Source of the DNA: Octopus sinensis
Lineage: Eukaryota
Direction of reading: 5' to 3'
Length of the DNA stretch: 64,000 nucleotides
Assembly: GCF_006345805.1 (NCBI RefSeq)
Contig: NC_043007.1
Span: forward strand, 49,724,001 to 49,788,000
The translations under genes and the position numbers were made by a program. Numbering within the stretch: position 1 is the first letter of the stretch; every line of letters starts with the position of its first letter. Below the pieces are notes generated by a model, which had not been told where the DNA came from, ran no database searches, and was given only the letters and a program-made list of their open reading frames with translations. Positions 13,030 to 64,000 of this stretch are shown in pieces.

Positions 13030-15043
<2,014 letters not shown>

Positions 15044-15047
<4 letters not shown>

Positions 15048-15579: not shown

Positions 15580-15580
<1 letters not shown>
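15044..15580 (+). mobile_element. ~545-bp AAT-flanked repeat, copy 2
   Basis: Colinear with 13435-13980, same termini. Confidence 0.75.
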
Positions 15581-15641
<61 letters not shown>

Positions 15642-15644
15642 TAG

Positions 15645-15920
15645 CAGTACCAGGCACTGGCTCTCATGGCTTATGATCTTAACTGATTGGAAGTGCTATC
15701 ATGTACATGTTTTGTCTTGGTATAAAAGATTGGTTACAGCAAAGATTAGTTACAGCAAACATTCTGCTCAATACCATAGATTTGCATGTCAGTTTGAGTT
15801 TAACCAGTTGAGCATGTCCCGTAGTGGCTGATAATATATGCATCTCTGATCACGAGCAGAAGTAGTTGAGCATCATAGCCATGTGTTGAGGGAAATTCTT
15901 TGGATTTCGAATAATTCCAT
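15645..15920 (+). mobile_element. AAT-flanked repeat, 3'-truncated copy 3
   Basis: cagtaccaggcactggctctcatggc..gagcatcatagccatgtgttgag, interrupted before the PLE RT fragment. Confidence 0.7.
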
Positions 15921-15964
15921 TAAACTGTCCTGTGATCCTCCCCCCCCCCAAAAAAAAATACGTC

Positions 15965-16880
15965 GTCAGTGAACGAAGAACACCTATATTTTATGGTCTC
16001 CCTAAAATACACAAAATGTTCGAAAGATTTCCTCCATTGCGCCCAATTTGAAGCGGATATGAATGTTGCACGGCCAAAATTTCGTTATGGCTGGATGGCT
16101 TTCTGCTCCCCGTCGCAAAACGATCAAGTTCCTACTTTCGGGTTACCTTTGATTTTGTATCTAAAATCAACAACAGAGGCCGTATTGGGAATTTTTGTTT
16201 CTTTTTTGGTAACTATGGATGTTTCTTCCTTGGTAATCATGGATGTTTCTTCCAATATTGACCATAATGAAGGGGTAGAAGCATATATGGATGCCTTCGA
16301 AAAGCGGTCAAACAAAAGTATTCTATCAAATTTTCTCTGTAGATAATTGAGGTTTGTGTTAGAAAGTAACATAATGAAGTTTAGACAAAGATTTTACCAC
16401 CAGACGAAGGGTTGTGCCATGGGTACCCACATGGCAGTTAATTTCGCTAATGTCTTCATAGCGAAATTCGGGACTCAGTTACTGAAGACATTCAAACCCC
16501 TTCATGGTCGTGAACCAATACTCTGGTTACCGTTCATTGACGACTTCTTGCACTTCTGTGACTGTTATGCTAGGAACTATGGCTTTAAATCCAACATAAA
16601 ATTTTCGTCTAGTTTTCCAAAAACTAGCGTTGAATTTTTGGACACAAAAGTCAAGTTTTCTTAAGGTAGAATAGTGACAGAGTTATTTTGCAAGCCCACG
16701 TCATCCCATATTTATCTCCACCGCCGCTCCAATCATCCATATCATCTTATTCGGTCAAATCCGAAATCCCAATTTTGCAAAGATATTTTCCAGTTTATTC
16801 TCTGCCATCTGCTGCAATAGGTTCACCGTACATCTCTATGACCAAGTTCAGTTATGAAAATAGATTTCTTTCATTATAGG
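15965..16880 (+). pseudogene. Penelope-like reverse transcriptase, frameshifted
   Basis: TPIFYGLPKIHK..PPLRPI, LVTMDVSS(L)..NIDHNEGVEA, FYHQTKGCAMGTHMAVNFANVFI, WLPFIDDF, VEFLD, ELFCKPTSSHIYLHRRSNHP: the ordered PLE RT and thumb motifs. Confidence 0.9.
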
Positions 16881-18899: not shown

Positions 18900-21065
18900 A
18901 TTTTGATTTTACCTGGGATTGGGCAAGTGTGTCTGTTGATTGCAGGTTATGGTTCTTTATTGTTCATTTTCTTCAATTCAAATTGTTTGGATGCCTCGTA
19001 ACCTTTTTTACGCTATGCAAATCGATGTCCCAAGATGTCAAGTTAAGCTGTAAAGATTTGGGGGATTGCTTCAACTTATGCTTATATCTAAGAACAAATC
19101 TTCCTTTACCGCGATATCCAACCACCTGTTAGCCATGCAGAAGACTTTTCGGAATGCGGTCATGTTTCATTCGAACATGTCCTAACTATCTGCACTGAAT
19201 TCCCATCAGCATGCTTTGAATACTGGAGATATCACACCTTCCTAAGATTTTGGCATTGAATATCCTATCTTGTCATTTTATGCTGCATATATTGTGCAAA
19301 AAGCAAATGTGGAAGGTTTCAAGTTTCTTCATGTCTGCTCCATAAAAAGCGTGCTCATAATACAAGATTTGTATTCACTTATTTTCGTTTTCAGACTTTC
19401 ATCGCGTTCATCCCACAAAGGATGGACAAGTCTTCCAAAAGCACTTGTTGCCTTAGCCATTCTAACATTGATTTTGTCGCCAAGAGTCTCTTCAAATTTA
19501 CTGTACTTCCAAGATGTTTAAATGACCTGATCCATTTGGGAGGCTTGTTGTTTATCATCAAGTTTGAATCTTGAGTATATCCTGCCCTAGGCCTTGGTTG
19601 GAATAAAGCACCATTCTTCTTGGTGCAGTCAGTCTAAATGCACGAGCTGCCGCAACAAACCTGTCGACCGTTTCCTGAATTCCCTCAAATATGTGAAAAA
19701 TCAAAGCACAACCATCAGCAAACAGTAAGTTATGCAGGATCTCTTCCTTGATCTGAAACTTTGCCCTTCCACATTTAATAGACCTCCTTCTGTGCGAAAC
19801 TGGAATTTTATACATTCATGTAGTCCCTAAAAGCATGCTGGAGCATCTTTGGAAAGAATATGGAAAAAAGTACAGTGGCAACAGAAAATGCCTCTGAACA
19901 TTGACAATTAGATATCACTGTTACCATCATTCTTTTATGCAGGGATACTATTACCTTCATCATATTATCAGAAAGTCCAACTTTTGACAACATTTTCTTG
20001 AGCGCCTCATGATTCACTGTATCAAAGGCCTTGGTCAAGTCGACAATGATCATATACAAATCAGTATCTTGTTCACATGCTTTCTTTCGAACTTGTCGGG
20101 GGGCAAATACCATGTCAACTGTGCCTCTCCCAGGTCGAAATCCACATTGGGATTCAGGATATATGCTGTTTATTACATGTTTATAGATGCGGTTGAGGGT
20201 TACCCTCGCAAGAATTTTTCCAGCTATTCACAACGTGCTTATTCCTTGTGATTATCACATATACTCTTCTTTCCTTTGAATTTGGACAAGTGCGTTATAG
20301 ATACATCTTTGAACTGCTGGGAAAGAGATTCACTTTCCCAGATCAAACAAATCAATTTGCGCAGCTTTCTTACAATTTGTCTGCCACCATGCTTGTACAC
20401 CTTTATAGGAATACGGTTTTGTCCAGGAGCCTGACCATTGGGAATTGTTTTGATAGCAGCACTTATCTCTTCCAAAGAAGGATCTTCCGCTAGTTCTTCA
20501 ATTATAGACCACTGGGGGATTTCGTTGATTACTTCAGAAGCGGTAGGATTCTTGATTTAATTACAGATTTAAAGTGTTCAGTCCAGCATTTCTGAATTTC
20601 ATTTTGCTACTTAGAGTTTTGTTCCACCGCTAGAAAGAATAGGTTCTGTGGCATCCTTTCTTGGACCAAATAAAACCCTTTAGATTGATATACAGTGCTC
20701 TCAAGTTGCGAGAGTTAGCAGCCTGTTCCAATTCTTGGGCATTTTTTGCCCACTATGAATTTTTCATCACACGCAGTTTTTCTGTGTAGTTTTTCTAGAG
20801 GAAATGTATAAGGATCTCAGTGTTGGTGAGGTTTTGTCTGAGATCCACGCCTTGTGTCTCTTGTGCAAAGTTTCTAGGAGAGGTTTAAATTGAGAATCGT
20901 TCTTGTCGAACCAATTTTGGTGCTTGCATTTCACGAACCCCAGAGCAACATCTGCAGATGATTTGATGCTGTCATGAATATTGTGCCATAACACCCCAGG
21001 ATCGTTACATTCCTTTATTACCGCTAGCTTTGAGTTAACAACAACATTTCCAGGTGTTTTGTCAA
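18900..21065 (-). mobile_element. Decayed RTE-clade LINE (5'-truncated)
   Basis: NWFDKND, EEISAAIKTIPNGQAPGQNRIPIKVYKHGG..LWESESLSQQFKD, DLYMIIVDLTKAFDTVNHEALKKML, NLLFADGCAL and LRYKHKLK in correct order on the minus strand. Confidence 0.9.
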
Positions 21066-22253
21066 TAACGTTGATAAAAGCTTTTCTAGTCTTTATTGGT
21101 GTATATTGACATGTGTATATCCGTCTGTGTGTGTAATACATTTATTAACATTCTGCACCAAGCTGATGTCATAAGAAAATAAGAAAAAAACAAGCGTTAC
21201 CTATATTTTATAAATGTCACATTTAGACACTGGAAACAATTTTAAGCATTTGTTCCCTGTTAGATATGTGTCCCTAAAAAAAGACGGTTGTATAAAACAC
21301 AAAAATTTCATATGGCTTTTATACAAACATTAAACGTAACGGACTGATTGATCGACTTACTATATCACACATTAAGTGATTATGTCTCTCTTCAGTAAAT
21401 TTCCATCCTTATTACAAACAATCAGAATGAAAGCATTCCACATTTACACATAATAAACATTTCTTACGTAGTCACAATCCCCACTTTGAAGGTTATATGA
21501 TACAAGATTGAATCAACCAGTATTTTAGCTGTATATATTTTATCGTTTCAGATAGAATGAATGGCTAAGTCAATCTCGGTGGGATTTCAAATAATAATGT
21601 GAAGTGAAGTGAATAAACGTAAGGTACTTTGCATTTTCTTCGGTCCATTATCTTTCAGTGTAGATTTCTAAATTTGGCTGAAGGTCATACATTTTAGAAG
21701 AGAAATGTACTCAGGTTTAATGATACCACCCTTGGTACATGACTGGCACACGTTTTATCAACTAGAGAAGATGAAAGTAAAATTCGATCCTGGTGAGATT
21801 TGAATATAGACTAGGGATGTTAACAAATACTAACAAGGCAATTAGTTCAGTGTCTTGCTGATTCTGTAATCAACAACCTCCAATATTAATTAAAATATGA
21901 GTCTTTGCGTTGGTACAAGGACACAATTTAAAATGAGAGATATATTTAATTAATTTAATTGCAGTATGCAGCTAACATCTATTTTACTATCAGAGGGTAA
22001 ACGCAGAATGCTAAAATATTTAAATTAAATTCTATAGAACAGTGTTTCGTACCCTAGATGACTGTACCTCCTTGAGGGCTTTATTAACTTGCAAGGAGAA
22101 AACAAATGTTAAGGAGCGCTATAGGGTGGCGGCGCTACGTGGCGTAGAGTGTTAAGGCTGCTCTTAAAAAACAAAAACTAGGTACAATACTTTTATCTTA
22201 AGCACATTCTCAATTATATTCCTTTCAAATATAATACCTCAAGCACAGAGAAA

Positions 22254-29361: not shown

Positions 29362-29449
<88 letters not shown>

Positions 29450-29562
29450 TATATATTTGTGTGCAAGATTTTTAATGTGAAATCGTGTGTTGAAACAGAT
29501 ATTGTTGTATTTCGGAATGGTCATTTTGCCAGTTTAGCTTTAGAAGGACCCTAGACAAACTT

Positions 29563-30003
29563 ATGCTAAGGATTAAGGTTGTTGAAAAGCCAGGCAACCC
29601 TATCAAATCCATAATCGGTAGAACCTACCCTTTTAGTAGAACCCCATGTACGGAGAGGTACTGTACTGTGTGTAGATTTAGCCCACAAACAAACTGTAAA
29701 GCCAGAAATGTAGTCTATAGTATAAGATGTATAGAGGGACGATGCAGTAACAAGACAACGACATACGTAGGGGAAACGGCACGAAGCATAGGAGAGCGAA
29801 TAAATGAAAATTGGAGAGAGCTTAAGGAAAGAAAGAGCTCATCGATTCTGTACCAACACGCCAAGCAGGAACATGGGCGCTCAATCAACAACATAGAAGT
29901 TAAAATCTTGTCTACACATAGAACAGGCGCAACAATCAGACAAATTACGGAAGCTACACACATAATAGAAGATAAACCTAGCCTGAATAGGAAACTGGAA
30001 TAG
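29563..30003 (+). pseudogene. Penelope-like GIY-YIG endonuclease domain (open frame, 5'-truncated)
   Basis: CTERYCTVC..NCKARNVVYSIRC..TYVGETARSIGERINE..SILYQH..EH..KIL..RQITEA..KPSLNRK. Confidence 0.9.
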
Positions 30004-30748: not shown

Positions 30749-30820
<72 letters not shown>

Positions 30821-31341: not shown

Positions 31342-32753
<1,412 letters not shown>

Positions 32754-32935
32754 TATATATATATGCATATATGGGTACAAGACATCATAAAAGGTAAATA
32801 ACATGAAATGCGAAGAGCCGCTTTTTATATAACTTGTCTTGTTTTCCATTTATTTCTCTCGTTGTTCGCATAAAAAGTTTGTCTTCGTACTCCAGGTTGT
32901 TTATGTTTTGAGATGTCCTGTAACCATATATGCAA

Positions 32936-34540: not shown

Positions 34541-34563
34541 ATATACGTATATATATATATATA

Positions 34564-35468
34564 AATGAATGTTTTTATATATAATGAACGTGAAATACAG
34601 GAAGGGACGAACACGGAACACAGACAAATCATTCGAAGCCTTCAATCTTCAGTCAAACACCGAATCATCATAGCAAATTTCGGCTGTTCAATTCTGATAT
34701 TTGCTCCAACTCGGCCAGCCCCAAGAAAAAAAACTAAGCTGTAAGCATTAGATTTCTTGGTAGAAGACAGGAATGTGAACGCACAAGACGGATGTGAATA
34801 CAAGAGACGAAAACGAAATTGAAAACACTAATGAATAAACAAAATATATATAACGGTGGTTGTCATACGACTTTAGACCAAATGAGACAAAAACAACAAC
34901 AACAACATAGCTGGCGTAGAAATAATTACCGTTTCGGTAGCGGGGACACATGTTGGTCGAGATACGAAGGCCAACAGAATGGTTTAAGAAGCAGCAGGTC
35001 GCAGGAGAGAGAGAAAGAGAGACAGAGAGAGAGGGAATCAAAGAGGGTGGAAGGCAGGGGACAGAATCAGTGACCAAGAGAAAAGGAGAAAGAAGGGATT
35101 AAGGAGGATGGGAGGAAGAGGGGAGGAGGATGGGAGGAAGAGAGGGGAAGAATCGGAGGGCGCCAAAAAGTTTGGTGAAGAAGCAATGGCGGGTAGGAAA
35201 GACAGTGTGTATAGAAGTCGTGCAGGGTTTAAAATTGGACAAACAAACGGGGGGGGGGGGGGTGCACGTAACGCCGCAATAATATAAGAATGAATGTTTT
35301 TATATATAATGAACGTGAAATACAGGAAGGGACGAACACGGAACACAGACAAATCATTCGAAGCCTTCAATCTTCAGTCAGACACCGAATCATCATAGCA
35401 AATTTCGGCTGTTCAATTCTGATATTTGCTCCAACTCGGCCAGCCCCAAGAAAAAAAACTAAGCTGTA
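34564..35468 (-). repeat. 180-bp direct repeats (34564-34743, 35289-35468) flanking a unique spacer; related to the 31.4-32.7 kb repeat
   Basis: Period 725; shares gactgaagattgaaggcttcgaatg and gagcaa..cagccgaaat in opposite orientation; strand assigned only relative to that copy. Confidence 0.85.
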
Positions 35469-37663: not shown

Positions 37664-37889
37664 ATATATATATATCTACTTACATATAAGAGACGAAAGT
37701 GTACATACATACATATAAAAAAATACAAAAAATGGGACAAGAATACAAAACATCCTGACAGATGATACAAAAAGGGACAAAAAAAAAACAAGGACGGGTC
37801 ATTCGGAGTTTTCTTCCGCCAGTCGAGCTCCAGATTGGATTTACAGTTTCGGCTGGTTGTACTCGAGACTGCTCCAATCTGGCCAGCTC

Positions 37890-38889
37890 CAAGGAAAATC
37901 TAATCCCATCAATCTAAAACTCTTTTGGTTTCAAAGCGAAGAACTCTGAAATGTCAGTTTCGACATCCTCCTGGCTTTGCCCTGATGAAACATCACTTCT
38001 TTTCGATTCACTAAATCGGGCCTTGTTTTCTTCAAAGCTTGGTTCAAACGCTCTAATTGCTGACAGTAGACTTGAGCATTGATTGTTGCAATAGGCGGTA
38101 ACAATTCAAAGTGAATTACTCCTTTGCAATCCCACCATATAGAGAGAAGAACTTTTTACCCATGAAGTTCCCTTCTCGGTTGTTGTCGAACCTTTTTCCC
38201 TTTTACCAAGCCACTGTTTACGACGTTTAACACTTCGATAGAAGATCTATTTTTCGTCACCAGTCACAAGTCTATCCAAAGTGGGTGAAATGATTTCGCA
38301 AGAATGGAGAGAAGAGCAGATTTGCGGTTGCTTTCGGACAATTCATGAGGCACCCATTTTCCAACTTTAGGAATCTATCCAAGTTGTTGAAGATGACGAT
38401 GAACAGTTGTATGGCTTGAACTAAGCTTTATTGCCAGTTCTTCAACTGATAATGCTGGATTTTCTTCAAGTAATGCTTCAAGGAACTTATCATCAAATTC
38501 AACTGGACGTCCTATTCGATCTTCATCTTCAAGGCTGACATCTCCACTTCTGAATTTTGCAAACCATCTTCTGCAAGTTCTTTCATTCAAGCATTCTTTC
38601 CTATAAACTGAGTGTATGTTTCAAGTTGCTTCGGCAGCAGAGTTTCCTTTTTTGTACTCATAAAGCATTATGTGTCTTAAATGCTCTTTGGATACTTCTA
38701 TGTTAGAAATGGTTTTAGTCAAAGAAATTTTAATTCTATTATTCTGTAAAATAATATTTAATTGGTGTAAGTGTACACAAATGCATATAAATAATTTTTA
38801 ATTCCATTAGACACTCTAAAATACTATTAAATTTCATTTAATTCTAAAAAACGTAAAATCGGACAGAACTTATGGGATGACCTGATATA
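37890..38889 (-). mobile_element. Mariner transposon, decayed and 3'-truncated
   Basis: TA-flanked TIR (TA)TCAGGTCATCCCATAAGTTCTGTCCG at 38860-38889; KEHLRHIMLYEYKKG, NERTCRRWFAKFRSGDVSLEDEDRIGRP, VTGDEK, INAQVYCQQLERL. Confidence 0.92.
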
Positions 38890-40181: not shown

Positions 40182-40300
40182 ATATATATACATATACTAC
40201 ATATAGCTTTGCTCGAAACGTAAAACACCCTTTCTTTCCTTTGCATGTACCACTTACTCGTGTACTTGTTTTTTCTTGTGCTTTTTGGGATTAACTTTAT

Positions 40301-40414
<114 letters not shown>

Positions 40415-40416
40415 TT

Positions 40417-43400
40417 ATAAATGAGGGTGAAAAATCGATATTAATTTAATAATACCATTAATTTAACACCAAGTGGCTTAGCACAAAAAACTACGGAGAG
40501 AAAATACAAATTTATACATAAATTATTAGAGAGTTATCCACTATGTGGATAACTCTAGTGCTAAAAATAGCTCCGAAGCAACCACAGAAGATCTGTTTCC
40601 AACTAGAATCAACATACATTTAGCGGAAGGAAAGTGAAATACAACGAATAAAATAGATTGACTCTATACAATTGTTTCATTACTAATGTAATATGTAGTT
40701 TTACTTACACTTACATCTATAAATCTTCGGTAGAGTTTGTCAGAAATGCAATTAATTAGATCGATTCGAGCATCAAAAGCACGAGCGGTCCAACCAATTA
40801 CATTTTTAGTTATGTCTCAACTTCCGCGCCAAAAGCATGCCTAGACTCCATTGGAAACGTATGCCGCATCAAATAAAATATTGACTGCCGCGTAGTTAAA
40901 TTTATAAAATTATAAATGAGGGTGAAAAATCGATATTAATTTAATAATACCATTAATTTAACACCAAGTGGCTTAGCACAAAAAACTACGGAGAAAATAC
41001 AAATTTATACATAAATTATTAGAGAGTTATCCACTATGTGGATAACTCTAGTGCTAAAAATAGCTCCGAAGCAACCACAGAAGATCTGTTTCCAACTAGA
41101 ATCAACATACATTTAGCGGAAGGAAAGTGAAATACAACGAATAAAATAGATTGACTCTATACAATTGTTTCATTACTAATGTAATATGTAGTTTTACTTA
41201 CACTTACATCTATAAATCTTCGGTAGAGTTTGTCAGAAATGCAATTAATTAGATCGATTCGAGCATCAAAAGCACGAGCGGTCCAACCAATTACATTTTT
41301 AGTTATGTCTCAACTTCCGCGCCAAAAGCATGCCTAGACTCCATTGGAAACGTATGCCGCATCAAATAAAATATTGACTGCCGCGTAGTTAAATTTATAA
41401 ATTATAAATGAGGGTGAAAAATCGATATTAATTTAATAATACCATTAATTTAACACCAAGTGGCTTAGCACAAAAAACTACGGAGAAAATACAAATTTAT
41501 ACATAAATTATTAGAGAGTTATCCACTATGTGGATAACTCTAGTGCTAAAAATAGCTCCGAAGCAACCACAGAAGATCTGTTTCCAACTAGAATCAACAT
41601 ACATTTAGCGGAAGGAAAGTGAAATACAACGAATAAAATAGATTGACTCTATACAATTGTTTCATTACTAATGTAATATGTAGTTTTACTTACACTTACA
41701 TCTATAAATCTTCGGTAGAGTTTGTCAGAAATGCAATTAATTAGATCGATTCGAGCATCAAAAGCACGAGCGGTCCAACCAATTACATTTTTAGTTATGT
41801 CTCAACTTCCGCGCCAAAAGCATGCCTAGACTCCATTGGAAACGTATGCCGCATCAAATAAAATATTGACTGCCGCGTAGTTAAATTTATAAAATTATAA
41901 ATGAGGGTGAAAAATCGATATTAATTTAATAATACCATTAATTTAACACCAAGTGGCTTAGCACAAAAAACTACGGAGAAAATACAAATTTATACATAAA
42001 TTATTAGAGAGTTATCCACTATGTGGATAACTCTAGTGCTAAAAATAGCTCCGAAGCAACCACAGAAGATCTGTTTCCAACTAGAATCAACATACATTTA
42101 GCGGAAGGAAAGTGAAATACAACGAATAAAATAGATTGACTCTATACAATTGTTTCATTACTAATGTAATATGTAGTTTTACTTACACTTACATCTATAA
42201 ATCTTCGGTAGAGTTTGTCAGAAATGCAATTAATTAGATCGATTCGAGCATCAAAAGCACGAGCGGTCCAACCAATTACATTTTTAGTTATGTCTCAACT
42301 TCCGCGCCAAAAGCATGCCTAGACTCCATTGGAAACGTATGCCGCATCAAATAAAATATTGACTGCCGCGTAGTTAAATTATAAAATTATAAATGAGGGT
42401 GAAAAATCGATATTAATTTAATAATACCATTAATTTAACACCAAGTGGCTTAGCACAAAAAACTACGGAGAAAATACAAATTTATACATAAATTATTAGA
42501 GAGTTATCCACTATGTGGATAACTCTAGTGCTAAAAATAGCTCCGAAGCAACCACAGAAGATCTGTTTCCAACTAGAATCAACATACATTTAGCGGAAGG
42601 AAAGTGAAATACAACGAATAAAATAGATTGACTCTATACAATTGTTTCATTACTAATGTAATATGTAGTTTTACTTACACTTACATCTATAAATCTTCGG
42701 TAGAGTTTGTCAGAAATGCAATTAATTAGATCGATTCGAGCATCAAAAGCACGAGCGGTCCAACCAATTACATTTTTAGTTATGTCTCAACTTCCGCGCC
42801 AAAAGCATGCCTAGACTCCATTGGAAACGTATGCCGCATCAAATAAAATATTGACTGCCGCGTAGTTAAATTTATAAAATTATAAATGAGGGTGAAAAAT
42901 CGATATTAATTTAATAATACCATTAATTTAACACCAAGTGGCTTAGCACAAAAAACTACGGAGAAAATACAAATTTATACATAAATTATTAGAGAGTTAT
43001 CCACTATGTGGATAACTCTAGTGCTAAAAATAGCTCCGAAGCAACCACAGAAGATCTGTTTCCAACTAGAATCAACATACATTTAGCGGAAGGAAAGTGA
43101 AATACAACGAATAAAATAGATTGACTCTATACAATTGTTTCATTACTAATGTAATATGTAGTTTTACTTACACTTACATCTATAAATCTTCGGTAGAGTT
43201 TGTCAGAAATGCAATTAATTAGATCGATTCGAGCATCAAAAGCACGAGCGGTCCAACCAATTACATTTTTAGTTATGTCTCAACTTCCGCGCCAAAAGCA
43301 TGCCTAGACTCCATTGGAAACGTATGCCGCATCAAATAAAATATTGACTGCCGCGTAGTTAAATTTATAAAATTATAAATGAGGGTGAAAAATCGATATT

Positions 43401-46400
43401 AATTTAATAATACCATTAATTTAACACCAAGTGGCTTAGCACAAAAAACTACGGAGAAAATACAAATTTATACATAAATTATTAGAGAGTTATCCACTAT
43501 GTGGATAACTCTAGTGCTAAAAATAGCTCCGAAGCAACCACAGAAGATCTGTTTCCAACTAGAATCAACATACATTTAGCGGAAGGAAAGTGAAATACAA
43601 CGAATAAAATAGATTGACTCTATACAATTGTTTCATTACTAATGTAATATGTAGTTTTACTTACACTTACATCTATAAATCTTCGGTAGAGTTTGTCAGA
43701 AATGCAATTAATTAGATCGATTCGAGCATCAAAAGCACGAGCGGTCCAACCAATTACATTTTTAGTTATGTCTCAACTTCCGCGCCAAAAGCATGCCTAG
43801 ACTCCATTGGAAACGTATGCCGCATCAAATAAAATATTGACTGCCGCGTAGTTAAATTTATAAAATTATAAATGAGGGTGAAAAATCGATATTAATTTAA
43901 TAATACCATTAATTTAACACCAAGTGGCTTAGCACAAAAAACTACGGAGAAAATACAAATTTATACATAAATTATTAGAGAGTTATCCACTATGTGGATA
44001 ACTCTAGTGCTAAAAATAGCTCCGAAGCAACCACAGAAGATCTGTTTCCAACTAGAATCAACATACATTTAGCGGAAGGAAAGTGAAATACAACGAATAA
44101 AATAGATTGACTCTATACAATTGTTTCATTACTAATGTAATATGTAGTTTTACTTACACTTACATCTATAAATCTTCGGTAGAGTTTGTCAGAAATGCAA
44201 TTAATTAGATCGATTCGAGCATCAAAAGCACGAGCGGTCCAACCAATTACATTTTTAGTTATGTCTCAACTTCCGCGCCAAAAGCATGCCTAGACTCCAT
44301 TGGAAACGTATGCCGCATCAAATAAAATATTGACTGCCGCGTAGTTAAATTTATAAAATTATAAATGAGGGTGAAAAATCGATATTAATTTAATAATACC
44401 ATTAATTTAACACCAAGTGGCTTAGCACAAAAAACTACGGAGAAAATACAAATTTATACATAAATTATTAGAGAGTTATCCACTATGTGGATAACTCTAG
44501 TGCTAAAAATAGCTCCGAAGCAACCACAGAAGATCTGTTTCCAACTAGAATCAACATACATTTAGCGGAAGGAAAGTGAAATACAACGAATAAAATAGAT
44601 TGACTCTATACAATTGTTTCATTACTAATGTAATATGTAGTTTTACTTACACTTACATCTATAAATCTTCGGTAGAGTTTGTCAGAAATGCAATTAATTA
44701 GATCGATTCGAGCATCAAAAGCACGAGCGGTCCAACCAATTACATTTTTAGTTATGTCTCAACTTCCGCGCCAAAAGCATGCCTAGACTCCATTGGAAAC
44801 GTATGCCGCATCAAATAAAATATTGACTGCCGCGTAGTTAAATTTATAAAATTATAAATGAGGGTGAAAAATCGATATTAATTTAATAATACCATTAATT
44901 TAACACCAAGTGGCTTAGCACAAAAAACTACGGAGAAAATACAAATTTATACATAAATTATTAGAGAGTTATCCACTATGTGGATAACTCTAGTGCTAAA
45001 AATAGCTCCGAAGCAACCACAGAAGATCTGTTTCCAACTAGAATCAACATACATTTAGCGGAAGGAAAGTGAAATACAACGAATAAAATAGATTGACTCT
45101 ATACAATTGTTTCATTACTAATGTAATATGTAGTTTTACTTACACTTACATCTATAAATCTTCGGTAGAGTTTGTCAGAAATGCAATTAATTAGATCGAT
45201 TCGAGCATCAAAAGCACGAGCGGTCCAACCAATTACATTTTTAGTTATGTCTCAACTTCCGCGCCAAAAGCATGCCTAGACTCCATTGGAAACGTATGCC
45301 GCATCAAATAAAATATTGACTGCCGCGTAGTTAAATTTATAAAATTATAAATGAGGGTGAAAAATCGATATTAATTTAATAATACCATTAATTTAACACC
45401 AAGTGGCTTAGCACAAAAAACTACGGAGAAAATACAAATTTATACATAAATTATTAGAGAGTTATCCACTATGTGGATAACTCTAGTGCTAAAAATAGCT
45501 CCGAAGCAACCACAGAAGATCTGTTTCCAACTAGAATCAACATACATTTAGCGGAAGGAAAGTGAAATACAACGAATAAAATAGATTGACTCTATACAAT
45601 TGTTTCATTACTAATGTAATATGTAGTTTTACTTACACTTACATCTATAAATCTTCGGTAGAGTTTGTCAGAAATGCAATTAATTAGATCGATTCGAGCA
45701 TCAAAAGCACGAGCGGTCCAACCAATTACATTTTTAGTTATGTCTCAACTTCCGCGCCAAAAGCATGCCTAGACTCCATTGGAAACGTATGCCGCATCAA
45801 ATAAAATATTGACTGCCGCGTAGTTAAATTTATAAAATTATAAATGAGGGTGAAAAATCGATATTAATTTAATAATACCATTAATTTAACACCAAGTGGC
45901 TTAGCACAAAAAACTACGGAGAAAATACAAATTTATACATAAATTATTAGAGAGTTATCCACTATGTGGATAACTCTAGTGCTAAAAATAGCTCCGAAGC
46001 AACCACAGAAGATCTGTTTCCAACTAGAATCAACATACATTTAGCGGAAGGAAAGTGAAATACAACGAATAAAATAGATTGACTCTATACAATTGTTTCA
46101 TTACTAATGTAATATGTAGTTTTACTTACACTTACATCTATAAATCTTCGGTAGAGTTTGTCAGAAATGCAATTAATTAGATCGATTCGAGCATCAAAAG
46201 CACGAGCGGTCCAACCAATTACATTTTTAGTTATGTCTCAACTTCCGCGCCAAAAGCATGCCTAGACTCCATTGGAAACGTATGCCGCATCAAATAAAAT
46301 ATTGACTGCCGCGTAGTTAAATTTATAAAATTATAAATGAGGGTGAAAAATCGATATTAATTTAATAATACCATTAATTTAACACCAAGTGGCTTAGCAC

Positions 46401-49400
46401 AAAAAACTACGGAGAAAATACAAATTTATACATAAATTATTAGAGAGTTATCCACTATGTGGATAACTCTAGTGCTAAAAATAGCTCCGAAGCAACCACA
46501 GAAGATCTGTTTCCAACTAGAATCAACATACATTTAGCGGAAGGAAAGTGAAATACAACGAATAAAATAGATTGACTCTATACAATTGTTTCATTACTAA
46601 TGTAATATGTAGTTTTACTTACACTTACATCTATAAATCTTCGGTAGAGTTTGTCAGAAATGCAATTAATTAGATCGATTCGAGCATCAAAAGCACGAGC
46701 GGTCCAACCAATTACATTTTTAGTTATGTCTCAACTTCCGCGCCAAAAGCATGCCTAGACTCCATTGGAAACGTATGCCGCATCAAATAAAATATTGACT
46801 GCCGCGTAGTTAAATTTATAAAATTATAAATGAGGGTGAAAAATCGATATTAATTTAATAATACCATTAATTTAACACCAAGTGGCTTAGCACAAAAAAC
46901 TACGGAGAAAATACAAATTTATACATAAATTATTAGAGAGTTATCCACTATGTGGATAACTCTAGTGCTAAAAATAGCTCCGAAGCAACCACAGAAGATC
47001 TGTTTCCAACTAGAATCAACATACATTTAGCGGAAGGAAAGTGAAATACAACGAATAAAATAGATTGACTCTATACAATTGTTTCATTACTAATGTAATA
47101 TGTAGTTTTACTTACACTTACATCTATAAATCTTCGGTAGAGTTTGTCAGAAATGCAATTAATTAGATCGATTCGAGCATCAAAAGCACGAGCGGTCCAA
47201 CCAATTACATTTTTAGTTATGTCTCAACTTCCGCGCCAAAAGCATGCCTAGACTCCATTGGAAACGTATGCCGCATCAAATAAAATATTGACTGCCGCGT
47301 AGTTAAATTTATAAAATTATAAATGAGGGTGAAAAATCGATATTAATTTAATAATACCATTAATTTAACACCAAGTGGCTTAGCACAAAAAACTACGGAG
47401 AAAATACAAATTTATACATAAATTATTAGAGAGTTATCCACTATGTGGATAACTCTAGTGCTAAAAATAGCTCCGAAGCAACCACAGAAGATCTGTTTCC
47501 AACTAGAATCAACATACATTTAGCGGAAGGAAAGTGAAATACAACGAATAAAATAGATTGACTCTATACAATTGTTTCATTACTAATGTAATATGTAGTT
47601 TTACTTACACTTACATCTATAAATCTTCGGTAGAGTTTGTCAGAAATGCAATTAATTAGATCGATTCGAGCATCAAAAGCACGAGCGGTCCAACCAATTA
47701 CATTTTTAGTTATGTCTCAACTTCCGCGCCAAAAGCATGCCTAGACTCCATTGGAAACGTATGCCGCATCAAATAAAATATTGACTGCCGCGTAGTTAAA
47801 TTTATAAAATTATAAATGAGGGTGAAAAATCGATATTAATTTAATAATACCATTAATTTAACACCAAGTGGCTTAGCACAAAAAACTACGGAGAAAATAC
47901 AAATTTATACATAAATTATTAGAGAGTTATCCACTATGTGGATAACTCTAGTGCTAAAAATAGCTCCGAAGCAACCACAGAAGATCTGTTTCCAACTAGA
48001 ATCAACATACATTTAGCGGAAGGAAAGTGAAATACAACGAATAAAATAGATTGACTCTATACAATTGTTTCATTACTAATGTAATATGTAGTTTTACTTA
48101 CACTTACATCTATAAATCTTCGGTAGAGTTTGTCAGAAATGCAATTAATTAGATCGATTCGAGCATCAAAAGCACGAGCGGTCCAACCAATTACATTTTT
48201 AGTTATGTCTCAACTTCCGCGCCAAAAGCATGCCTAGACTCCATTGGAAACGTATGCCGCATCAAATAAAATATTGACTGCCGCGTAGTTAAATTTATAA
48301 AATTAATTGCATTTCTGACAAACTCTACCGAAGATTTATAGATGTAAGTGTAAGTAAAACTACATATTACATTAGTAATGAAACAATTGTATAGAGTCAA
48401 TCTATTTTATTCGTTGTATTTCACTTTCCTTCCGCTAAATGTATGTTGATTCTAGTTGGAAACAGATCTTCTGTGGTTGCTTCGGAGCTATTTTTAGCAC
48501 TAGAGTTATCCACATAGTGGATAACTCTCTAATAATTTATGTATAAATTTGTATTTTCTCCGTAGTTTTTTGTGCTAAGCCACTTGGTGTTAAATTAATG
48601 GTATTATTAAATTAATATCGATTTTTCACCCTCATTTATAATTTTATAAATTTAACTACGCGGCAGTCAATATTTTATTTGATGCGGCATACGTTTCCAA
48701 TGGAGTCTAGGCATGCTTTTGGCGCGGAAGTTGAGACATAACTAAAAATGTAATTGGTTGGACCGCTCGTGCTTTTGATGCTCGAATCGATCTAATTAAT
48801 TGCATTTCTGACAAACTCTACCGAAGATTTATAGATGTAAGTGTAAGTAAAACTACATATTACATTAGTAATGAAACAATTGTATAGAGTCAATCTATTT
48901 TATTCGTTGTATTTCACTTTCCTTCCGCTAAATGTATGTTGATTCTAGTTGGAAACAGATCTTCTGTGGTTGCTTCGGAGCTATTTTTAGCACTAGAGTT
49001 ATCCACATAGTGGATAACTCTCTAATAATTTATGTATAAATTTGTATTTTCTCCGTAGTTTTTTGTGCTAAGCCACTTGGTGTTAAATTAATGGTATTAT
49101 TAAATTAATATCGATTTTTCACCCTCATTTATAATTTTATAAATTTAACTACGCGGCAGTCAATATTTTATTTGATGCGGCATACGTTTCCAATGGAGTC
49201 TAGGCATGCTTTTGGCGCGGAAGTTGAGACATAACTAAAAATGTAATTGGTTGGACCGCTCGTGCTTTTGATGCTCGAATCGATCTAATTAATTGCATTT
49301 CTGACAAACTCTACCGAAGATTTATAGATGTAAGTGTAAGTAAAACTACATATTACATTAGTAATGAAACAATTGTATAGAGTCAATCTATTTTATTCGT

Positions 49401-50019
49401 TGTATTTCACTTTCCTTCCGCTAAATGTATGTTGATTCTAGTTGGAAACAGATCTTCTGTGGTTGCTTCGGAGCTATTTTTAGCACTAGAGTTATCCACA
49501 TAGTGGATAACTCTCTAATAATTTATGTATAAATTTGTATTTTCTCCGTAGTTTTTTGTGCTAAGCCACTTGGTGTTAAATTAATGGTATTATTAAATTA
49601 ATATCGATTTTTCACCCTCATTTATAATTTTATAAATTTAACTACGCGGCAGTCAATATTTTATTTGATGCGGCATACGTTTCCAATGGAGTCTAGGCAT
49701 GCTTTTGGCGCGGAAGTTGAGACATAACTAAAAATGTAATTGGTTGGACCGCTCGTGCTTTTGATGCTCGAATCGATCTAATTAATTGCATTTCTGACAA
49801 ACTCTACCGAAGATTTATAGATGTAAGTGTAAGTAAAACTACATATTACATTAGTAATGAAACAATTGTATAGAGTCAATCTATTTTATTCGTTGTATTT
49901 CACTTTCCTTCCGCTAAATGTATGTTGATTCTAGTTGGAAACAGATCTTCTGTGGTTGCTTCGGAGCTATTTTTAGCACTAGAGTTATCCACATAGTGGA
50001 TAACTCTCTAATAATTTAT
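40417..50019. repeat. Tandem array of a 493-bp non-coding unit: 16 direct copies then about 3.5 inverted copies
   Basis: atgagggtg anchors at 40421, 40916, 41408, 41901, 42393, 42886, 43379, 43872, 44365, 44858, 45351, 45844, 46337, 46830, 47323, 47816; inversion at 48301-48305; inverted anchors (cat) at 48633, 49126, 49619. Confidence 0.98.
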
Positions 50020-50960
50020 ATATTTATATTTATATATATAATTGCAGTTCACGTTTGAAACTGATAAGTGCATTGTATTACGAAATTCTCGTTTATTCCT
50101 TCGTCATCCCAGATTCATACTACCGTTCTGTACTCGATGTTTCGTTCTGAAACTTGCGTATATTGACTACTAACACCAGGTTATTAGTATCGCAATGACC
50201 AAACATTCAACTACGGTAGAAGTTGAATAATATTAAGTTCGCAATTTACTCACATGCAGCATCTTTCTGAGCTTGTTGCTAATTCACTTCTTAACCAAAT
50301 TTAACATTTTTGAAGAGGAGTGGTCGCTAGCTACATTTTGGCATAAAAAATTGAAATTTGATCCAGTAGAAAAAAATTTACATCAAAATTTGTAGCAGCG
50401 TTATAGGAGAGTAGGTAACGCCACCAATCAAGTTTAGATCTAAATAACTTTTTTTTTAATTTTAAGAGCAAAATATATTTATCTTAGTTTCAATGATAAA
50501 AGAAAGCATGAATAATTTCATAGTTTTGGTCCCACGCAGCAAAACTTTGTATCAAAAATGTTGTGTGGTAAAAAAAAGATATAAGTAAGGCAAAAAATTG
50601 GATTTAAGTATAATTAGCTTTTTTATTTTAAAAACAAACAATATTTTAATTTAGCTTAAATGATAGATCTCAATTCGAGGAATTTCGTCGTATCAATTTC
50701 ATGCAATGATGTTTTAAAAGGAAAAAGTTATGAATGTTTGTTTCTCAAATTTGGGGGTGATAACATAGTTCTGTACATTTTTATGAATATAGTTCTATAA
50801 GGGGAATTTTAATATACGTCACCGGCCTTTTTGAAGTAAGGAAAAAATTATCAACGACACCGCTAATTGACACATTTGGCACATTATTAATTAGTATAAT
50901 AACATAGCCTGGAAAAAACATGGATTGTGTGGTAAAATGCAAGCAAGAGAAATAATATTA

Positions 50961-51723
50961 AGATCATAAACCTGAAAAATTACAGGATAATATATTACAC
51001 TTGCATCTGGTAAAGTACAGAACAAGAACATTTTTACTTAAAATATTGCAGCTAAGGATAAAATTTGAATATTAAATATTATTTAATTTTAATTTACAAA
51101 GTAACATTATAATTAAAAAGGGTACCATCATTTCGTTAAAATACTGACACACTAGTATACTTAAAAAAATGAGAACCAGAAGAAACAATATAACTAAAGT
51201 TTTATGCAAAATAGAATGGTACATATGGTAGGCAAATTCATTATGTAAAAAATAAGCATTGGGTCAAGAGTAAATATGTGAAGATTTGGCAATAGCTTAG
51301 GCAATAACTCAAGCAAATTTTACTGTGAATTTTTTGTTATTGGTAGATTTTTACTGTAAAATATAACTAATTTTTGTATTATTCTATTTATTGTACTAAC
51401 TAATTATGTACTACTATTATTTTTAATAACCTACTTTCAAATTTCTAATTATTATTTAATAATTGAAAAAATTAATATTTTTAAAGTGCCAAAAATATTT
51501 TGAGTTATTTTTAAAATCTTTAATAAAAGTGACAAATAGAAGTAATAACTTATAATAAAATGTTTACTTTTAATAAATATAAATATTTTATTTGAAATTT
51601 TATCCTTAGCTGCAATATTTTAAGTAAAATTTTTCTTGTTCTCTACTTTACCAGATGTAACAAGGTGTCCTGAACTTTTCCAAGTGTAATAACTTGTCCT
51701 GTAATTTTCCAGATTTATAATCT
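50961..51723. mobile_element. MITE/foldback-like element with ~120-bp terminal inverted repeats
   Basis: 50961-51080 (ctgaaaaattacagg..catctggtaaagt..aaaatattgcagctaaggataaaattt) is the reverse complement of 51580-51723 apart from one short insertion; AT-rich non-coding interior. Confidence 0.6.
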
Positions 51724-53309
51724 CGCATTTTTCCATGTAATCGAAATATATGTTTGTAATATATATATATAGTTATCTAAAGGAATTTCTAATCATTACT
51801 CTATATTTAGGGATAGGAATAAAGGTAACAGTACAGGGCTTAGTAAATTAATTTGGGATCTAAAAGACCACAATAAACAATTTAATTTAGATTGGTTGAT
51901 TCTCTCAATCTCGATACCTTATGAAAAAGGCAAGGGATTCTGTCTTCTCTGTAATTCTGAACTATTTTTTATTCTTTTTCCTAAAAATCTCCTTGTAAAC
52001 ACGGTTAAAGAGCGTGCATACCGATGTAAACATTGGCAGAAACACACCTTTATTTCAGATAAGTGATTTCTATTATTATATATAATTTAAACATTAATTT
52101 TCATTTTTCAGTTCACATTCGCTAGATATATCTTTTTCCAAGTCTCTATGGCTTTAGTTAATAGACATATAATCATACACTTCTCATTTATTTAGTTTTT
52201 TTATGCCTTCTCTTTCTATAGGCTACCTCTGACGTTATATCATATAACGTTTATTTGAAACAATATTAATAGCGTTCAGTTAATCACTATACATATCCAT
52301 CATTTTCTATTAAAATGTCTTATTAACGAGTTTCATTTCTTCACTTCCCTGAAGAAAAGATTGCATTGTTTTATACCATTTTATTCCTTTGGAATAATAT
52401 CAGTGATATCTTCGAAATGTGTCGGAAGTAAAAGCATTTGAATAACACCTGCGTTTAACTCCATTTATATATATATATATATATAATTATTGTTGTTATT
52501 GCTTTACTTCTCAGAGCTCTCAGTCTTGCTTGTTCTGGTTGATTCTGTAAAAGCTGGATGAATGATTCGGCCTCGGTATGTTCTCTCCACCAACCACAGT
52601 CTGATGATTTCCTACCCGTACTTCGATGCCGAAAAATTTAACATAATCATTATTCCAATTTCTACATTATTCCAATTTCTACCTCTTTCTTTTTTCTGTC
52701 AATTTGCAATTCCATTTATTATCCTTTTTCTGTTGCAAGTCTTATCATGTTGTGTTTCCACTTACCTATTTTGTTAATCTTCAGAATTCTTCCTTCCGTG
52801 GCTCTTTCTGTTGCTCTTAATTTATTTTCAATGTTCATGTTTACTTTATTCTATTTAATTATTTCAATACTATGAGGTTCTTACGTATGTATATGCATAC
52901 GTATGCATATATGTACGTGTACATGAATGTATGTATGTTTGTATAAAGAAACATTTACATGTATGTCGCTGTCAATATATATTTGGGGGTGTATTCATGT
53001 ATGCGTGTTGGATTTGCATATATCTATCCATCTATCTATCTTTTTTTCTATACAAAGACGTGCACATATACACACATACACGGTTACGGCAATGCTTTAA
53101 TTGAACATCTGTATGTGTGTATTTGTGTGTCATTTTGTATAAATATAATAATAGGTAATGACATTTGTACTCACACAAGTAAGTGGGTACGTGTGTGTAC
53201 ATTTGGAGATAACGCAAAGATAAAAGAACTGTAAACACTTATATAATGAAGATTATTCGCAGGTAACCTTCTTTGACAATGGGCAGATGATCAATATTTC
53301 TGACAGATT

Positions 53310-63541: not shown

Positions 63542-63546
<5 letters not shown>

Positions 63547-64000
63547 TTAAAATTACTAAGTCTCTCTAAAAGAGATCACGGCAGCGTTCCTGGAAAATAA
63601 TAGTTATCGCCATACTAATATGGCATTCTTATAAAAATAAGAATAAAGCTGTCCGCTTATTAGCTCCATGAGGCCATCGCCTTAAGTTAGCTATTTGATA
63701 CACAAACTGTATCCATATAACCTTCGAACAAGGGAGGTCAGTCGCTCCACACTACTTGATCGACAGCTACAGACGCGTTTCGGGGTATTGCCTCTTTTCA
63801 ATGTAGCGTAGTCAGACCAGTAGGTGTCGCTTATGACAATCTCTGTTCGAAGGTTTTATTTACCTAGTTTCAGTGGAATACATCCACTTGTTTTCAATAA
63901 TAGAAATATTAAAATTACTAAGTCTCTCTAAAAGAGATCACGGCAGCGTTCCTGGAAAATAATAGTTATCGCCATACTAATATGGCATTCTTATAAAAAT
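63542..64000. repeat. Start of a 362-bp tandem repeat running off the window
   Basis: 63542-63638 is identical to 63904-64000 (97 nt); begins directly after (TA)n. Confidence 0.9.
63751..63812 (-). ncRNA. Type I hammerhead ribozyme motif with U3:A8 core
   Basis: Minus strand ACTAC GCTACA TTGAAAA GAGG-CAATA-CCCC GAAAC GC GTC TGTAGC TGTCGATCAA GTAGT: 6-bp stem I plus 5-bp extension, stem II with one mismatch, palindromic ACGCGU stem III, GUC site. Confidence 0.8.

What the first reader, a model, noticed from the sequence alone, without database searches (positions are those of the whole stretch)
40417..48305. Sixteen near-identical head-to-tail copies of a 493-bp non-coding unit inserted in a TA microsatellite
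Seen: 7.9 kb of exact 492-495-bp periodicity with no ORF, beginning abruptly at the end of (TA)n, like the hammerhead-bearing 362-bp unit. Inference: a long homogeneous concatemer with a sharp start fits one rolling-circle copying event of a small circular template (circular RNA via PLE RT, or extrachromosomal circular DNA) better than an old satellite. I could not find a canonical ribozyme core in this unit, so if it is an RNA replicon it uses an unrecognised motif or none.
Basis: partly seen in the sequence, partly recalled or inferred. Interest (0 to 1): 0.82.

Follow-up and report, generated by a model that had tools for sequence, protein, structure and literature searches.

The report
Two-armed tandem-repeat insertion at TA microsatellite
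A 9.6-kb block of 19.5 almost identical copies of a 493-bp non-coding unit (16 forward, then 3.5 inverted) sits between two copies of a 16-bp target sequence beside a TA repeat, which marks it as one recent insertion copied inward from both ends of a staggered break, most likely by a Penelope-like retroelement enzyme.

Summary
Sixteen head-to-tail 493-bp units lie at 40415-48300. Twelve of the 15 full units are identical and three differ only by 1-2-nt indels. There are no substitutions and no ORF longer than 35 aa. The array does not stop at 48305. It turns over at a 5-nt microhomology (AATTA) and continues for 3.5 inverted units to 50019. The whole block is flanked by the only two exact copies in the window of ATATTTATATTTATAT, a 16-bp target-site duplication.

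If each arm was extended from the target 3' end it abuts, both arms were copied from the same template strand. That is the twin-priming signature. This template strand is also the one with the more stable predicted RNA fold (z -6.6).

Three other non-coding tandems in the window (units of 362, 725 and 851 bp) also end in TA tracts. A 5'-truncated Penelope-like element (PLE) endonuclease fragment also lies between TA repeats.

Best reading (confidence 0.42): a non-autonomous, hammerhead-less element inserted as a multimer by a PLE-type enzyme. No ribozyme, no circle and no second locus could be shown. Copying of a DNA circle during break repair remains a serious rival.

The parts
40298..40398 (.). 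(TACA)n(TA)n microsatellite, the pre-existing target region to the left of the insertion
   Evidence: TRF row 40298-40419; sequence read
40399..40414 (+). Left copy of the 16-bp target-site duplication ATATTTATATTTATAT
   Evidence: Only two exact copies occur in the window, one at each flank of the array
40415..48300 (+). Forward arm of 16.0 units of 493 bp, running from unit phase 1 to about phase 491. Units 1, 2 and 4 carry 1-2-nt indels.
42993..43019 (+). Perfect 12-bp-stem, 3-nt-loop hairpin AGAGTTATCCAC-TAT-GTGGATAACTCT at unit positions 114-140. The coordinates give one example unit; the hairpin is present in every unit.
   Evidence: paired in every fold
48301..48305 (.). Inversion junction: a 5-nt microhomology AATTA shared by both arms, lying inside the 8-bp palindrome AATTAATT (48301-48308)
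   Evidence: junction compared with the continuation of each arm
48306..50019 (-). Inverted arm of 3.5 units, identical to the consensus. Counting the shared AATTA it runs from unit phase 341 at the junction to phase 102 at the outer end. The outer end lies 12 nt past the last hairpin (49981-50007).
50020..50035 (+). Right copy of the 16-bp target-site duplication

Best explanation
The block is a single, very recent insertion of a multimer of a 493-nt non-coding unit into the degenerate edge of a (TA)n microsatellite.

Proposed steps (all inferred except where marked as shown):
1. A staggered break left 16-nt 3' overhangs. These later became the target-site duplication (the duplication itself is shown).
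2. Both 3' ends primed synthesis at A/T-rich patches of the same template strand, the reverse complement of the + strand unit. The left end copied 16 units and the right end 3.5 units.
3. The two nascent strands have the same polarity and so cannot anneal along their length. They were joined through a 5-nt microhomology, which produced the inverted junction (junction and microhomology are shown).
4. The most likely enzyme is the reverse transcriptase/GIY-YIG endonuclease of a Penelope-like element acting in trans.
5. The most likely template is a multimeric or circular RNA of the unit.

On this reading the unit behaves like an animal 'retrozyme' but lacks the hammerhead. Which enzyme acted, whether the template was RNA, and whether it was a circle are all inferred, not shown.
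For: 1. One event. There are no substitutions across 19.5 units (95% upper bound about 3e-4 per site). Both ends are sharp. The flanking 16-mer occurs nowhere else in the window.

2. Strand polarity. The strand attached to the left flank's 3' end and the strand attached to the right flank's 3' end both read in the consensus polarity. If each arm was extended from the target 3' end it abuts, both are copies of one template strand. This follows directly from the arm orientations. The junction carries the AATTA microhomology.

3. Fold. The inferred template strand is the more structured one as RNA. Its z-score is -6.6, against -3.3 for the other strand. Circular folding gives -6.0 against -3.7. 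Twenty-four control folds (12 windows of 493 nt, both strands) average -0.96 with sd 1.55.

4. Context.
- All 7 observable ends of four unrelated or separate tandem elements in the window (units of 493, 362, 851 and 725 bp) lie within 13 bp of a (TA)>=5 tract. Only 7% of window positions lie within 20 bp of such a tract.
- The ORF at 29494-30000 is a PLE C-terminal GIY-YIG endonuclease with a CX4CX2C motif. It has 1405 homologues, the best at E 2.8e-40. Two of the longer hits, read by eye, carry PLE-type RT motifs upstream of the endonuclease.
- That ORF is a 5'-truncated copy lying between (AT)47 and (AT)34.

5. Literature.
- PLEs of the Naiad and Neptune type prefer (TA)n, form partial tandems with an adjacent inverted 5'-truncated copy, and Naiads lack hammerheads (PMC8557442).
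- Penelope can mobilise unrelated sequence in trans, with TSDs and palindromes at inverted junctions (PMC3846280).
- Animal retrozymes are tandem, low in GC, and have TSDs longer than 4 bp (PMC7229834).
Against: - The unit shares no significant sequence with the PLE remnants in the window. The best local score is 34, just above the largest of 20 shuffles (29), and was judged A/T-rich low complexity.
- No hammerhead or any other Rfam ribozyme is found on either strand at E<=10.
- No second locus of the unit was found in any collection searched. Mobility is therefore inferred from a single insertion.
- The TSD is low-complexity sequence next to a microsatellite.
- 'Head-to-head' orientation cannot be established independently, because the sense strand is inferred from the model itself.
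- The 30-40-bp 'tail' often seen at PLE ends is absent.
- TA repeats are also fragile sites, so the TA association does not separate an endonuclease from breakage and repair.
- Copy number and unit identity depend on an assembly I cannot check.
Confidence: 0.42

Rival explanations
1. A DNA-level event. A double-strand break in the fragile (TA)n tract was repaired by microhomology-primed DNA synthesis on an extrachromosomal circular DNA of the unit, by rolling-circle copying. Both ends happened to copy the same strand, and microhomology-mediated joining produced the inversion.
For: - Microhomologies of 3-7 nt occur at both outer ends and 5 nt at the junction, all in A/T-rich patches of the unit.
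- The array is perfectly homogeneous.
- Spread of euchromatic satellite arrays through eccDNA, with microhomology at insertion sites, is documented in Drosophila and Tribolium (PMC7403614, PMC11610590).
- No ribozyme and no PLE sequence is present in the unit.
Against: - A clean 16-bp duplication and a two-armed inverted structure are the textbook outcome of endonuclease-initiated target-primed synthesis. They are not typical of eccDNA reintegration.
- Four separate tandem or partial-tandem elements in 64 kb all end in TA tracts. Copy numbers of 1.26 and 1.54 look like PLE pseudo-LTR partial tandems.
- The strand asymmetry of the RNA fold would be a coincidence.
Confidence: 0.25
2. An ordinary local satellite. 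A small initial insertion or duplication, possibly already with an inverted piece, was expanded in place by unequal crossing-over or replication slippage and kept homogeneous by gene conversion.
For: - The only three variant units are units 1, 2 and 4 at the left edge. The chance that all three fall in the first 4 of 19.5 units is about 0.009. This is the classical pattern of more diverged array edges (cited in PMC11610590).
- The retrozyme preprint also invokes local amplification after insertion.
Against: - Both arms are multimeric (16 and 3.5 units), so two independent expansions would be needed.
- There are no substitutions at all. The variants are 1-2-nt indels in short runs, which are equally consistent with sequencing or polishing errors.
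- The right edge shows no variants.
Confidence: 0.15
3. An assembly artefact. The copy number, the identity between units or the inverted arm was created by collapse, polishing or a chimeric long read.
For: - Perfect identity of the inner units is what consensus polishing of a repeat produces.
- PLE-type tandem/inverted structures are known to confuse assemblies (PMC8557442).
- Variants occur only near the uniquely anchored left edge.
Against: - The inverted arm ends in the second copy of the TSD, followed by unique flank in the correct orientation. Both arms therefore belong to one coherent insertion.
- The junction is not a perfect palindrome (about phase 491 joined to phase 341), unlike fold-back read artefacts.
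Confidence: 0.08
4. A Helitron- or Helentron-type rolling-circle DNA transposon multimer, or a satellite carried by one.
For: - A perfect 12-bp hairpin lies 12 nt from the right end, as at Helitron 3' ends.
- The target is A/T-rich.
- Tandem arrays carried by Helentrons are known in bivalves and Drosophila (from my own knowledge; also cited in PMC11610590).
Against: - A 16-bp TSD is present, whereas Helitrons make none.
- The ends are not 5'-TC...CTRR-3'.
- The start and end phases of the array are not adjacent in the unit (phases 1 and 102).
- There are no flanking left or right transposon sequences.
- No Rep/helicase remnant was noticed among the stop-free stretches of 70 aa or more, which were read by eye and not searched.
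Confidence: 0.03

Closest known systems
Animal non-LTR retrozymes (tandem type I hammerhead repeats, thought to be mobilised by PLEs; PMC7229834 and bioRxiv 10.64898/2026.07.22.740005)
   Same: Head-to-tail tandem copies of a few-hundred-nt non-coding unit. Low GC (32.5%). TSD longer than 4 bp. PLEs are present in the genome. The predicted RNA is highly self-complementary.
   Different: No hammerhead and no other known self-cleaving motif. The unit, at 493 nt, is longer than the sizes recalled for animal retrozymes (about 170-400 nt, my own recollection). circRNA was not shown. The inverted second arm and the (TA)n target are not part of the published retrozyme description.
Insertion architecture of EN+ Penelope-like elements (Naiad, Neptune, Penelope; PMC8557442, PMC3846280)
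   Same: Partial or multiple direct tandem copies plus an adjacent inverted 5'-truncated copy. TSD present. A palindrome at the inverted junction. Preference for (TA)n. Naiads lack hammerheads. Unrelated sequence can be mobilised in trans.
   Different: The unit carries no RT or EN ORF. It shows no detectable similarity to the PLE remnants in the window. There are 16 + 3.5 units instead of 1-2. No 30-40-bp tail is present.
L1 twin priming (Ostertag and Kazazian 2001; cited from my own knowledge)
   Same: A TSD-flanked insertion made of two inverted segments. Their polarity shows that both target 3' ends primed on one template strand, with microhomology at the internal junction.
   Different: The template here is a repeated or circular 493-nt unit, not a LINE mRNA. 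There is no poly(A). The enzyme is probably not an APE-type LINE endonuclease.
Euchromatic satellite arrays spread by eccDNA or transposons (Drosophila 1.688 and Rsp-like, Tribolium Cast1-9; PMC7403614, PMC11610590)
   Same: A short, homogeneous array of a non-coding unit of a few hundred bp in a non-heterochromatic context, with A/T-rich microhomology at the junctions.
   Different: Those arrays are known from many loci and have eccDNA evidence. Here one locus is seen, with a clean TSD and an inverted arm.
Rolling-circle reverse transcription in the bacterial DRT2 defence system (PMC12039810)
   Same: A reverse transcriptase going round a short non-coding template makes long head-to-tail concatemeric DNA.
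   Different: DRT2 is a prokaryotic defence system that does not integrate into the genome. It is an analogy of mechanism only.

Membership tests
Animal non-LTR retrozyme | Type I hammerhead ribozyme in every repeat unit | tested here: not met
   Rfam gathering scan of the window gave 0 hits. An E<=10 scan of a dimer on both strands found no ribozyme family. No CUGANGA box on either strand.
Animal non-LTR retrozyme | Head-to-tail tandem copies of a short non-coding unit with low GC | tested here: met
   19.5 units of 493 bp, 32.5% GC, longest ORF 35 aa
Animal non-LTR retrozyme | Unit-length circular RNA in the transcriptome | not testable with these tools
   No expression data are available. 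Only predicted folds could be made.
PLE-type insertion (non-autonomous derivative) | Direct tandem copies plus an adjacent inverted 5'-truncated copy | tested here: met
   16 forward and 3.5 inverted units joined at 48301-48305. A head-to-head arrangement holds only if the sense strand is the reverse complement of the + strand unit, and that is inferred.
PLE-type insertion (non-autonomous derivative) | Target-site duplication | tested here: met
   The 16-mer ATATTTATATTTATAT is found exactly twice in the window, at the two flanks. Caveat: it is low-complexity sequence.
PLE-type insertion (non-autonomous derivative) | Insertion bias for (TA)n (Naiad and Neptune clades) | tested here: met
   Both ends of the array lie 12-13 bp from (TA)>=5 tracts. 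All 7 observable ends of four tandem elements in the window lie within 13 bp, against a 7% background of positions within 20 bp of such a tract.
PLE-type insertion (non-autonomous derivative) | Sequence shared with the pseudo-LTR or UTR of an autonomous PLE | tested here: inconclusive
   No significant similarity to the PLE remnants at 15.6-18.0 kb, 29.5-30.8 kb or 51.1-52.7 kb. Only degraded fragments are available in the window, so the genome-wide PLE set is untested.
PLE-type insertion (non-autonomous derivative) | 30-40-bp 'tail' extension at one end (optional feature) | tested here: not met
   The unit sequence abuts the TSD directly at both ends.
Euchromatic satellite DNA spread through eccDNA | Many dispersed arrays of the same unit and the unit present in the eccDNA fraction | not testable with these tools
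   No other copy in the window. No match in viral, metagenome, plasmid or phage collections. The source genome is not in the searchable collections.
Helitron / Helentron | 5'-TC...CTRR-3' ends and insertion between A and T without a TSD | tested here: not met
   The ends read TTATAAATG... and ...AATAATTTAT, and a 16-bp TSD is present.
Helitron / Helentron | Subterminal 3' hairpin about 10-12 nt from the end | tested here: met
   The hairpin at 49981-50007 is followed by 12 nt and then the TSD. With only one end of this kind, it may be a coincidence.
Classical heterochromatic satellite | Long arrays with measurable divergence between monomers | tested here: not met
   The array is 9.6 kb with zero substitutions and only three 1-2-nt indels.

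The most novel reading that the evidence does not exclude
The 493-nt unit, and perhaps the unrelated 362-nt unit in the same window, is a hammerhead-less 'retrozyme'. It would be a small non-coding RNA that is processed to unit length and circularised either by an unrecognised self-cleaving motif or by host enzymes. A PLE reverse transcriptase would then copy it by rolling-circle (or template-jumping) reverse transcription at TA-repeat nicks. This would be a class of circular-RNA-based mobile elements that ribozyme-based searches cannot see.
Probability: 0.15. Interest if true: 0.85.

Novelty: new variant of a known kind. Interest (0 to 1): 0.55.

Why it matters
How PLEs and the tandem 'retrozyme' repeats they are thought to mobilise actually integrate is still unsolved. 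There is no in vitro system, and most insertions are old or lie in repeats where ends cannot be read.

This locus is an unusually clean and apparently very young case. The TSD, both priming sites, the polarity of both arms and the internal joint are all readable to the base.

If the reading is right, three things follow:
1. Multimeric non-coding units can be inserted by two-ended priming at TA repeats.
2. A hammerhead is not needed for this.
3. Part of what is annotated as 'satellite DNA' in microsatellite-rich invertebrate genomes is born in single retro-insertion events.

The locus also supplies concrete substrates for experiments: the unit, its hairpin and the target.

Tried and rejected
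Ribozymes
- The Rfam gathering scan of the whole window gave 0 hits.
- E<=10 scans of a 493-bp dimer and of the 362-bp unit returned only chance sRNA and miRNA hits.
- A regular-expression search for hammerhead cores found nothing.
- HDV-like descriptor searches were not run.

Other copies of the unit
- There is none elsewhere in the window.
- Three exact-pattern scans of viral contigs were empty.
- The metagenome scan with the hairpin pattern gave two unrelated loci that share only the hairpin.
- Plasmid and phage BLAST searches were empty.
- Exact look-up of two 35-aa unit ORFs in the assembly collection found nothing.
- Full-text search for unit 20-mers, and for a 493-bp satellite, found nothing relevant.

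Organism
- The PLE endonuclease gave no word-index hits.
- The LINE RT fragment gave a best hit of 55% identity with no informative names.
- The source genome is not in the searchable collections.

Other checks
- No tRNA-like genes were found in the window.
- The four tandem units share no similarity, except the 851-bp and 725-bp units with each other.
- The unit shows no significant similarity to the PLE remnants.
- The Helitron reading was rejected on the TSD and the termini.
- A simple fold-back (perfect palindrome) reading was rejected because the junction joins about phase 491 to phase 341.


Full report
**Observation**

TRF finds a 493-bp period from 40415 to 48305, with 16.0 copies and 99% matches. 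Directly after it, a second 493-bp array with a different consensus runs from 48301 to 50023. Reading the sequence shows that this second array is the reverse complement of the first.

An anchor word recurs at spacings of 495, 492, 493, 492 and then eleven times 493. Twelve of the 15 complete units are identical. The other three are units 1, 2 and 4 from the left edge. They differ by +GA, -A and -T and carry no substitutions.

The inverted part (48301-50019, 1719 nt, 3.49 units) is an exact substring of the concatenated consensus. The real object is therefore 9605 bp, or 19.5 units. The 95% upper bound on substitution divergence is about 3e-4 per site.

The unit is 32.5% GC. Its longest ORF is 35 aa, and it has no other copy in the window. 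The inverted arm and the flanking duplication were missed.

**Boundaries**

- The left flank ends in ...(TA)n TATTTATATTTATAT, and the unit then starts at TTATAAATGAGG (phase 1).
- The right arm ends in ...hairpin-CTAATAATTTAT (phase 102), followed by ATATTTATATTTATAT ATATAATTGCAG.
- The 16-mer ATATTTATATTTATAT occurs exactly twice in 64 kb, at 40399-40414 and 50020-50035. Shuffles give an expected 0.1 matches even when one mismatch is allowed. I read this as a 16-bp target-site duplication, with the caveat that it is low-complexity sequence at a microsatellite edge.
- At the internal junction the forward arm (about phase 491) and the inverted arm (phase 341) share AATTA (48301-48305), which lies inside the palindrome AATTAATT. 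Because the two phases differ, this is not a fold-back palindrome.
- The second TSD copy and the correctly oriented unique flank follow the inverted arm. The arm is therefore part of the same insertion and is unlikely to be a chimeric-read artefact.

**What the geometry implies**

The top strand of the left arm and the bottom strand of the right arm both read in the consensus polarity. These are the strands covalently continuous with the two target 3' ends. If the insert was made by extending those ends, both were copied from one template strand, the reverse complement of the + strand unit.

Two nascent strands of the same polarity cannot anneal along their length. They must be joined by microhomology, which is what the junction shows. 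With a 16-nt stagger, this is the twin-priming geometry known from L1 (my own knowledge).

The inferred template strand is also the more structured one when folded as RNA:
- Linear fold: -139.9 kcal/mol with z -6.6, against -101 kcal/mol with z -3.3 for the other strand.
- Circular fold: z -6.0 against -3.7.
- Controls: 24 folds (12 windows of 493 nt from this window, both strands) average -0.96 with sd 1.55 and minimum -4.75.

The fold contains a long imperfect rod and the perfect 12-bp hairpin. The right arm's outer end lies in the unpaired 12 nt just 3' of that hairpin.

**Context in the window**

The window is eukaryotic and about 10% perfect microsatellite. It is full of transposon debris:
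- A mariner remnant (Pfam Transposase_1, 1.3e-19).
- A LINE RT fragment.
- PLE pieces, described next.

The ORF at 29494-30000 has 1405 homologues in the representative library, the best at E 2.8e-40. Two of the longer hits (P0139 and P0199), read by eye, carry PLE-type RT motifs followed by this domain at the C-terminus. Pfam sees GIY-YIG only weakly, at E 0.07. The ORF carries a CX4CX2C motif before the GIY core.

PMC8557442 attributes the CX2-5CxxC linker to Neptune, Nematis and Naiad endonucleases and suggests it may mediate microsatellite targeting. This copy is 5'-truncated. It starts 38 bp after (AT)47, and (AT)34 lies downstream.

Three further non-coding tandems also begin or end in TA tracts:
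- A 362-bp unit from 63543 to the window end.
- An 851-bp unit in 1.54 copies at 31445-32761.
- A 725-bp unit in 1.26 copies at 34563-35468.

All seven observable ends lie within 13 bp of a (TA)>=5 tract, whereas only 7% of positions lie within 20 bp of one. The 493- and 362-bp units are unrelated to each other and to the other two.

**Comparison with what is known**

The following properties are published:
- EN+ PLEs form partial tandems with an adjacent inverted 5'-truncated copy.
- They have TSDs and palindromes at inverted junctions.
- They can mobilise unrelated sequence in trans (PMC3846280).
- Naiads prefer (TA)n and lack hammerheads (PMC8557442).
- Animal retrozymes are tandem hammerhead repeats with low GC and TSDs longer than 4 bp (PMC7229834). 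A 2026 preprint argues that they derive from PLE pseudo-LTRs.

The present array matches the PLE insertion architecture feature by feature. It fails the defining retrozyme feature, because no hammerhead or any other Rfam ribozyme is found on either strand. It also shows no significant similarity to the PLE remnants available here. I therefore file it as working like a PLE-mobilised, retrozyme-like element, not as a member of the retrozyme family.

**Rivals**

- Spread of euchromatic satellite arrays through eccDNA, with A/T-rich microhomology, is documented. Repair synthesis on a DNA circle at a broken TA repeat could give the same product if both ends copied the same strand. I cannot separate RNA from DNA templates with sequence alone.
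- A circle is not required either. A long multimeric transcript, or end-to-end template jumping on monomers, would give the same product. The forward arm is 16.0 units long to within the junction microhomology. That hints at natural unit termini, but it could also be a coincidence of A/T-rich breakpoints.
- In-place expansion is suggested by the clustering of the three indel variants at the left edge (P about 0.009). It would, however, need two independent expansions, one in each arm.
- A Helitron is excluded by the TSD and the termini, although a hairpin lies 12 nt from one end.
- Assembly artefacts cannot be checked here.

**What could not be done**

The source genome is not in any searchable collection. 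The key test, whether the unit is dispersed at other TA repeats, remains open. There are no expression data.

**Verdict**

This is a real, cleanly bounded and very young two-armed insertion of a multimeric non-coding unit at a TA microsatellite. It is a new variant of known kinds (PLE-type or retrozyme-like insertion, or the birth of a euchromatic satellite). Interest is moderate to high because the insertion mechanics can be read to the base. The more exotic reading, a ribozyme-less circular RNA element, remains possible but unproven.

Noticed in passing
window 63543-64000: A second, unrelated tandem unit of 362 bp (at least 1.27 copies, 99% identical, cut by the window end) starts 1 bp after a (TA)n tract. 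Rfam at E<=10 finds no hammerhead and neither strand has a CUGANGA box. Its predicted RNA is strongly structured on both strands (z -6.4 and -7.0).
   Followed up: partly
window 31445-32761: A partial tandem of 1.54 copies of an 851-bp non-coding unit (97% identical). It starts right after (TA)60 and ends in a short (AT)5 stretch. It has the look of a PLE pseudo-LTR partial tandem.
   Followed up: partly
window 34563-35468: A partial tandem of 1.26 copies of a 725-bp unit (98% identical), with both ends in TA tracts. It shares about 150 bp with the 851-bp unit in the opposite orientation, and with a third copy near 37700-37906.
   Followed up: partly
window 29457-30000 (+), flanked by (AT)47 at 29365-29456 and (AT)34 at 30753-30820: A 5'-truncated Penelope-like element retaining only its C-terminal GIY-YIG endonuclease, with a CX4CX2C motif. 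It has 1405 homologues, the best at E 2.8e-40, and two of the longer hits read by eye have PLE RT motifs upstream. It sits between TA repeats.
   Followed up: yes
window 15890-16817 (+): A degraded PLE-type reverse transcriptase spread over several frames (motifs YGLPKIHK...RPI, GCAMG, FIDD). Pfam RVT_1 matches only at E 0.07. The Barwin Pfam hit at 15969-16346 (E 7.6e-5, just above its cutoff) lies in the same region and is probably spurious.
   Followed up: partly
window 51773-52063 (+): A 97-aa stop-free stretch (…LSKLIWDLKD…CLLCNSE…CKHW…) lies 1.7 kb to the right of the array. From memory it resembles a GIY-YIG-type domain of invertebrate repeats. Pfam gives no hit, so it is not confirmed.
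   Followed up: partly
window 40415-42386: The only three variant units of the 493-bp array (+GA, -A, -T, all in short runs) are units 1, 2 and 4 at the left edge. The remaining 15.5 units, including the whole inverted arm, are identical. This could reflect an array-edge effect, early-synthesis errors or assembly polishing.
   Followed up: partly
window 50961-51111 and 51556-51723: An inverted repeat (core arms 51001-51069 and 51592-51660, 93% complementary, 522 nt apart), like a MITE or foldback element, lying just to the right of the array.
   Followed up: no
window 37934-38620 (-) and 19561-21141 (-): A mariner transposase remnant (Pfam Transposase_1 at 1.3e-19 and HTH_48) and a LINE reverse transcriptase remnant (best database identity 55%).
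   Followed up: partly
window 13031-15917: A roughly 1-kb (AAT)n tract (13979-15045), with (ATG)n and other trinucleotide runs, is embedded in a 1.6-kb segmental duplication of about 80-89% identity.
   Followed up: no
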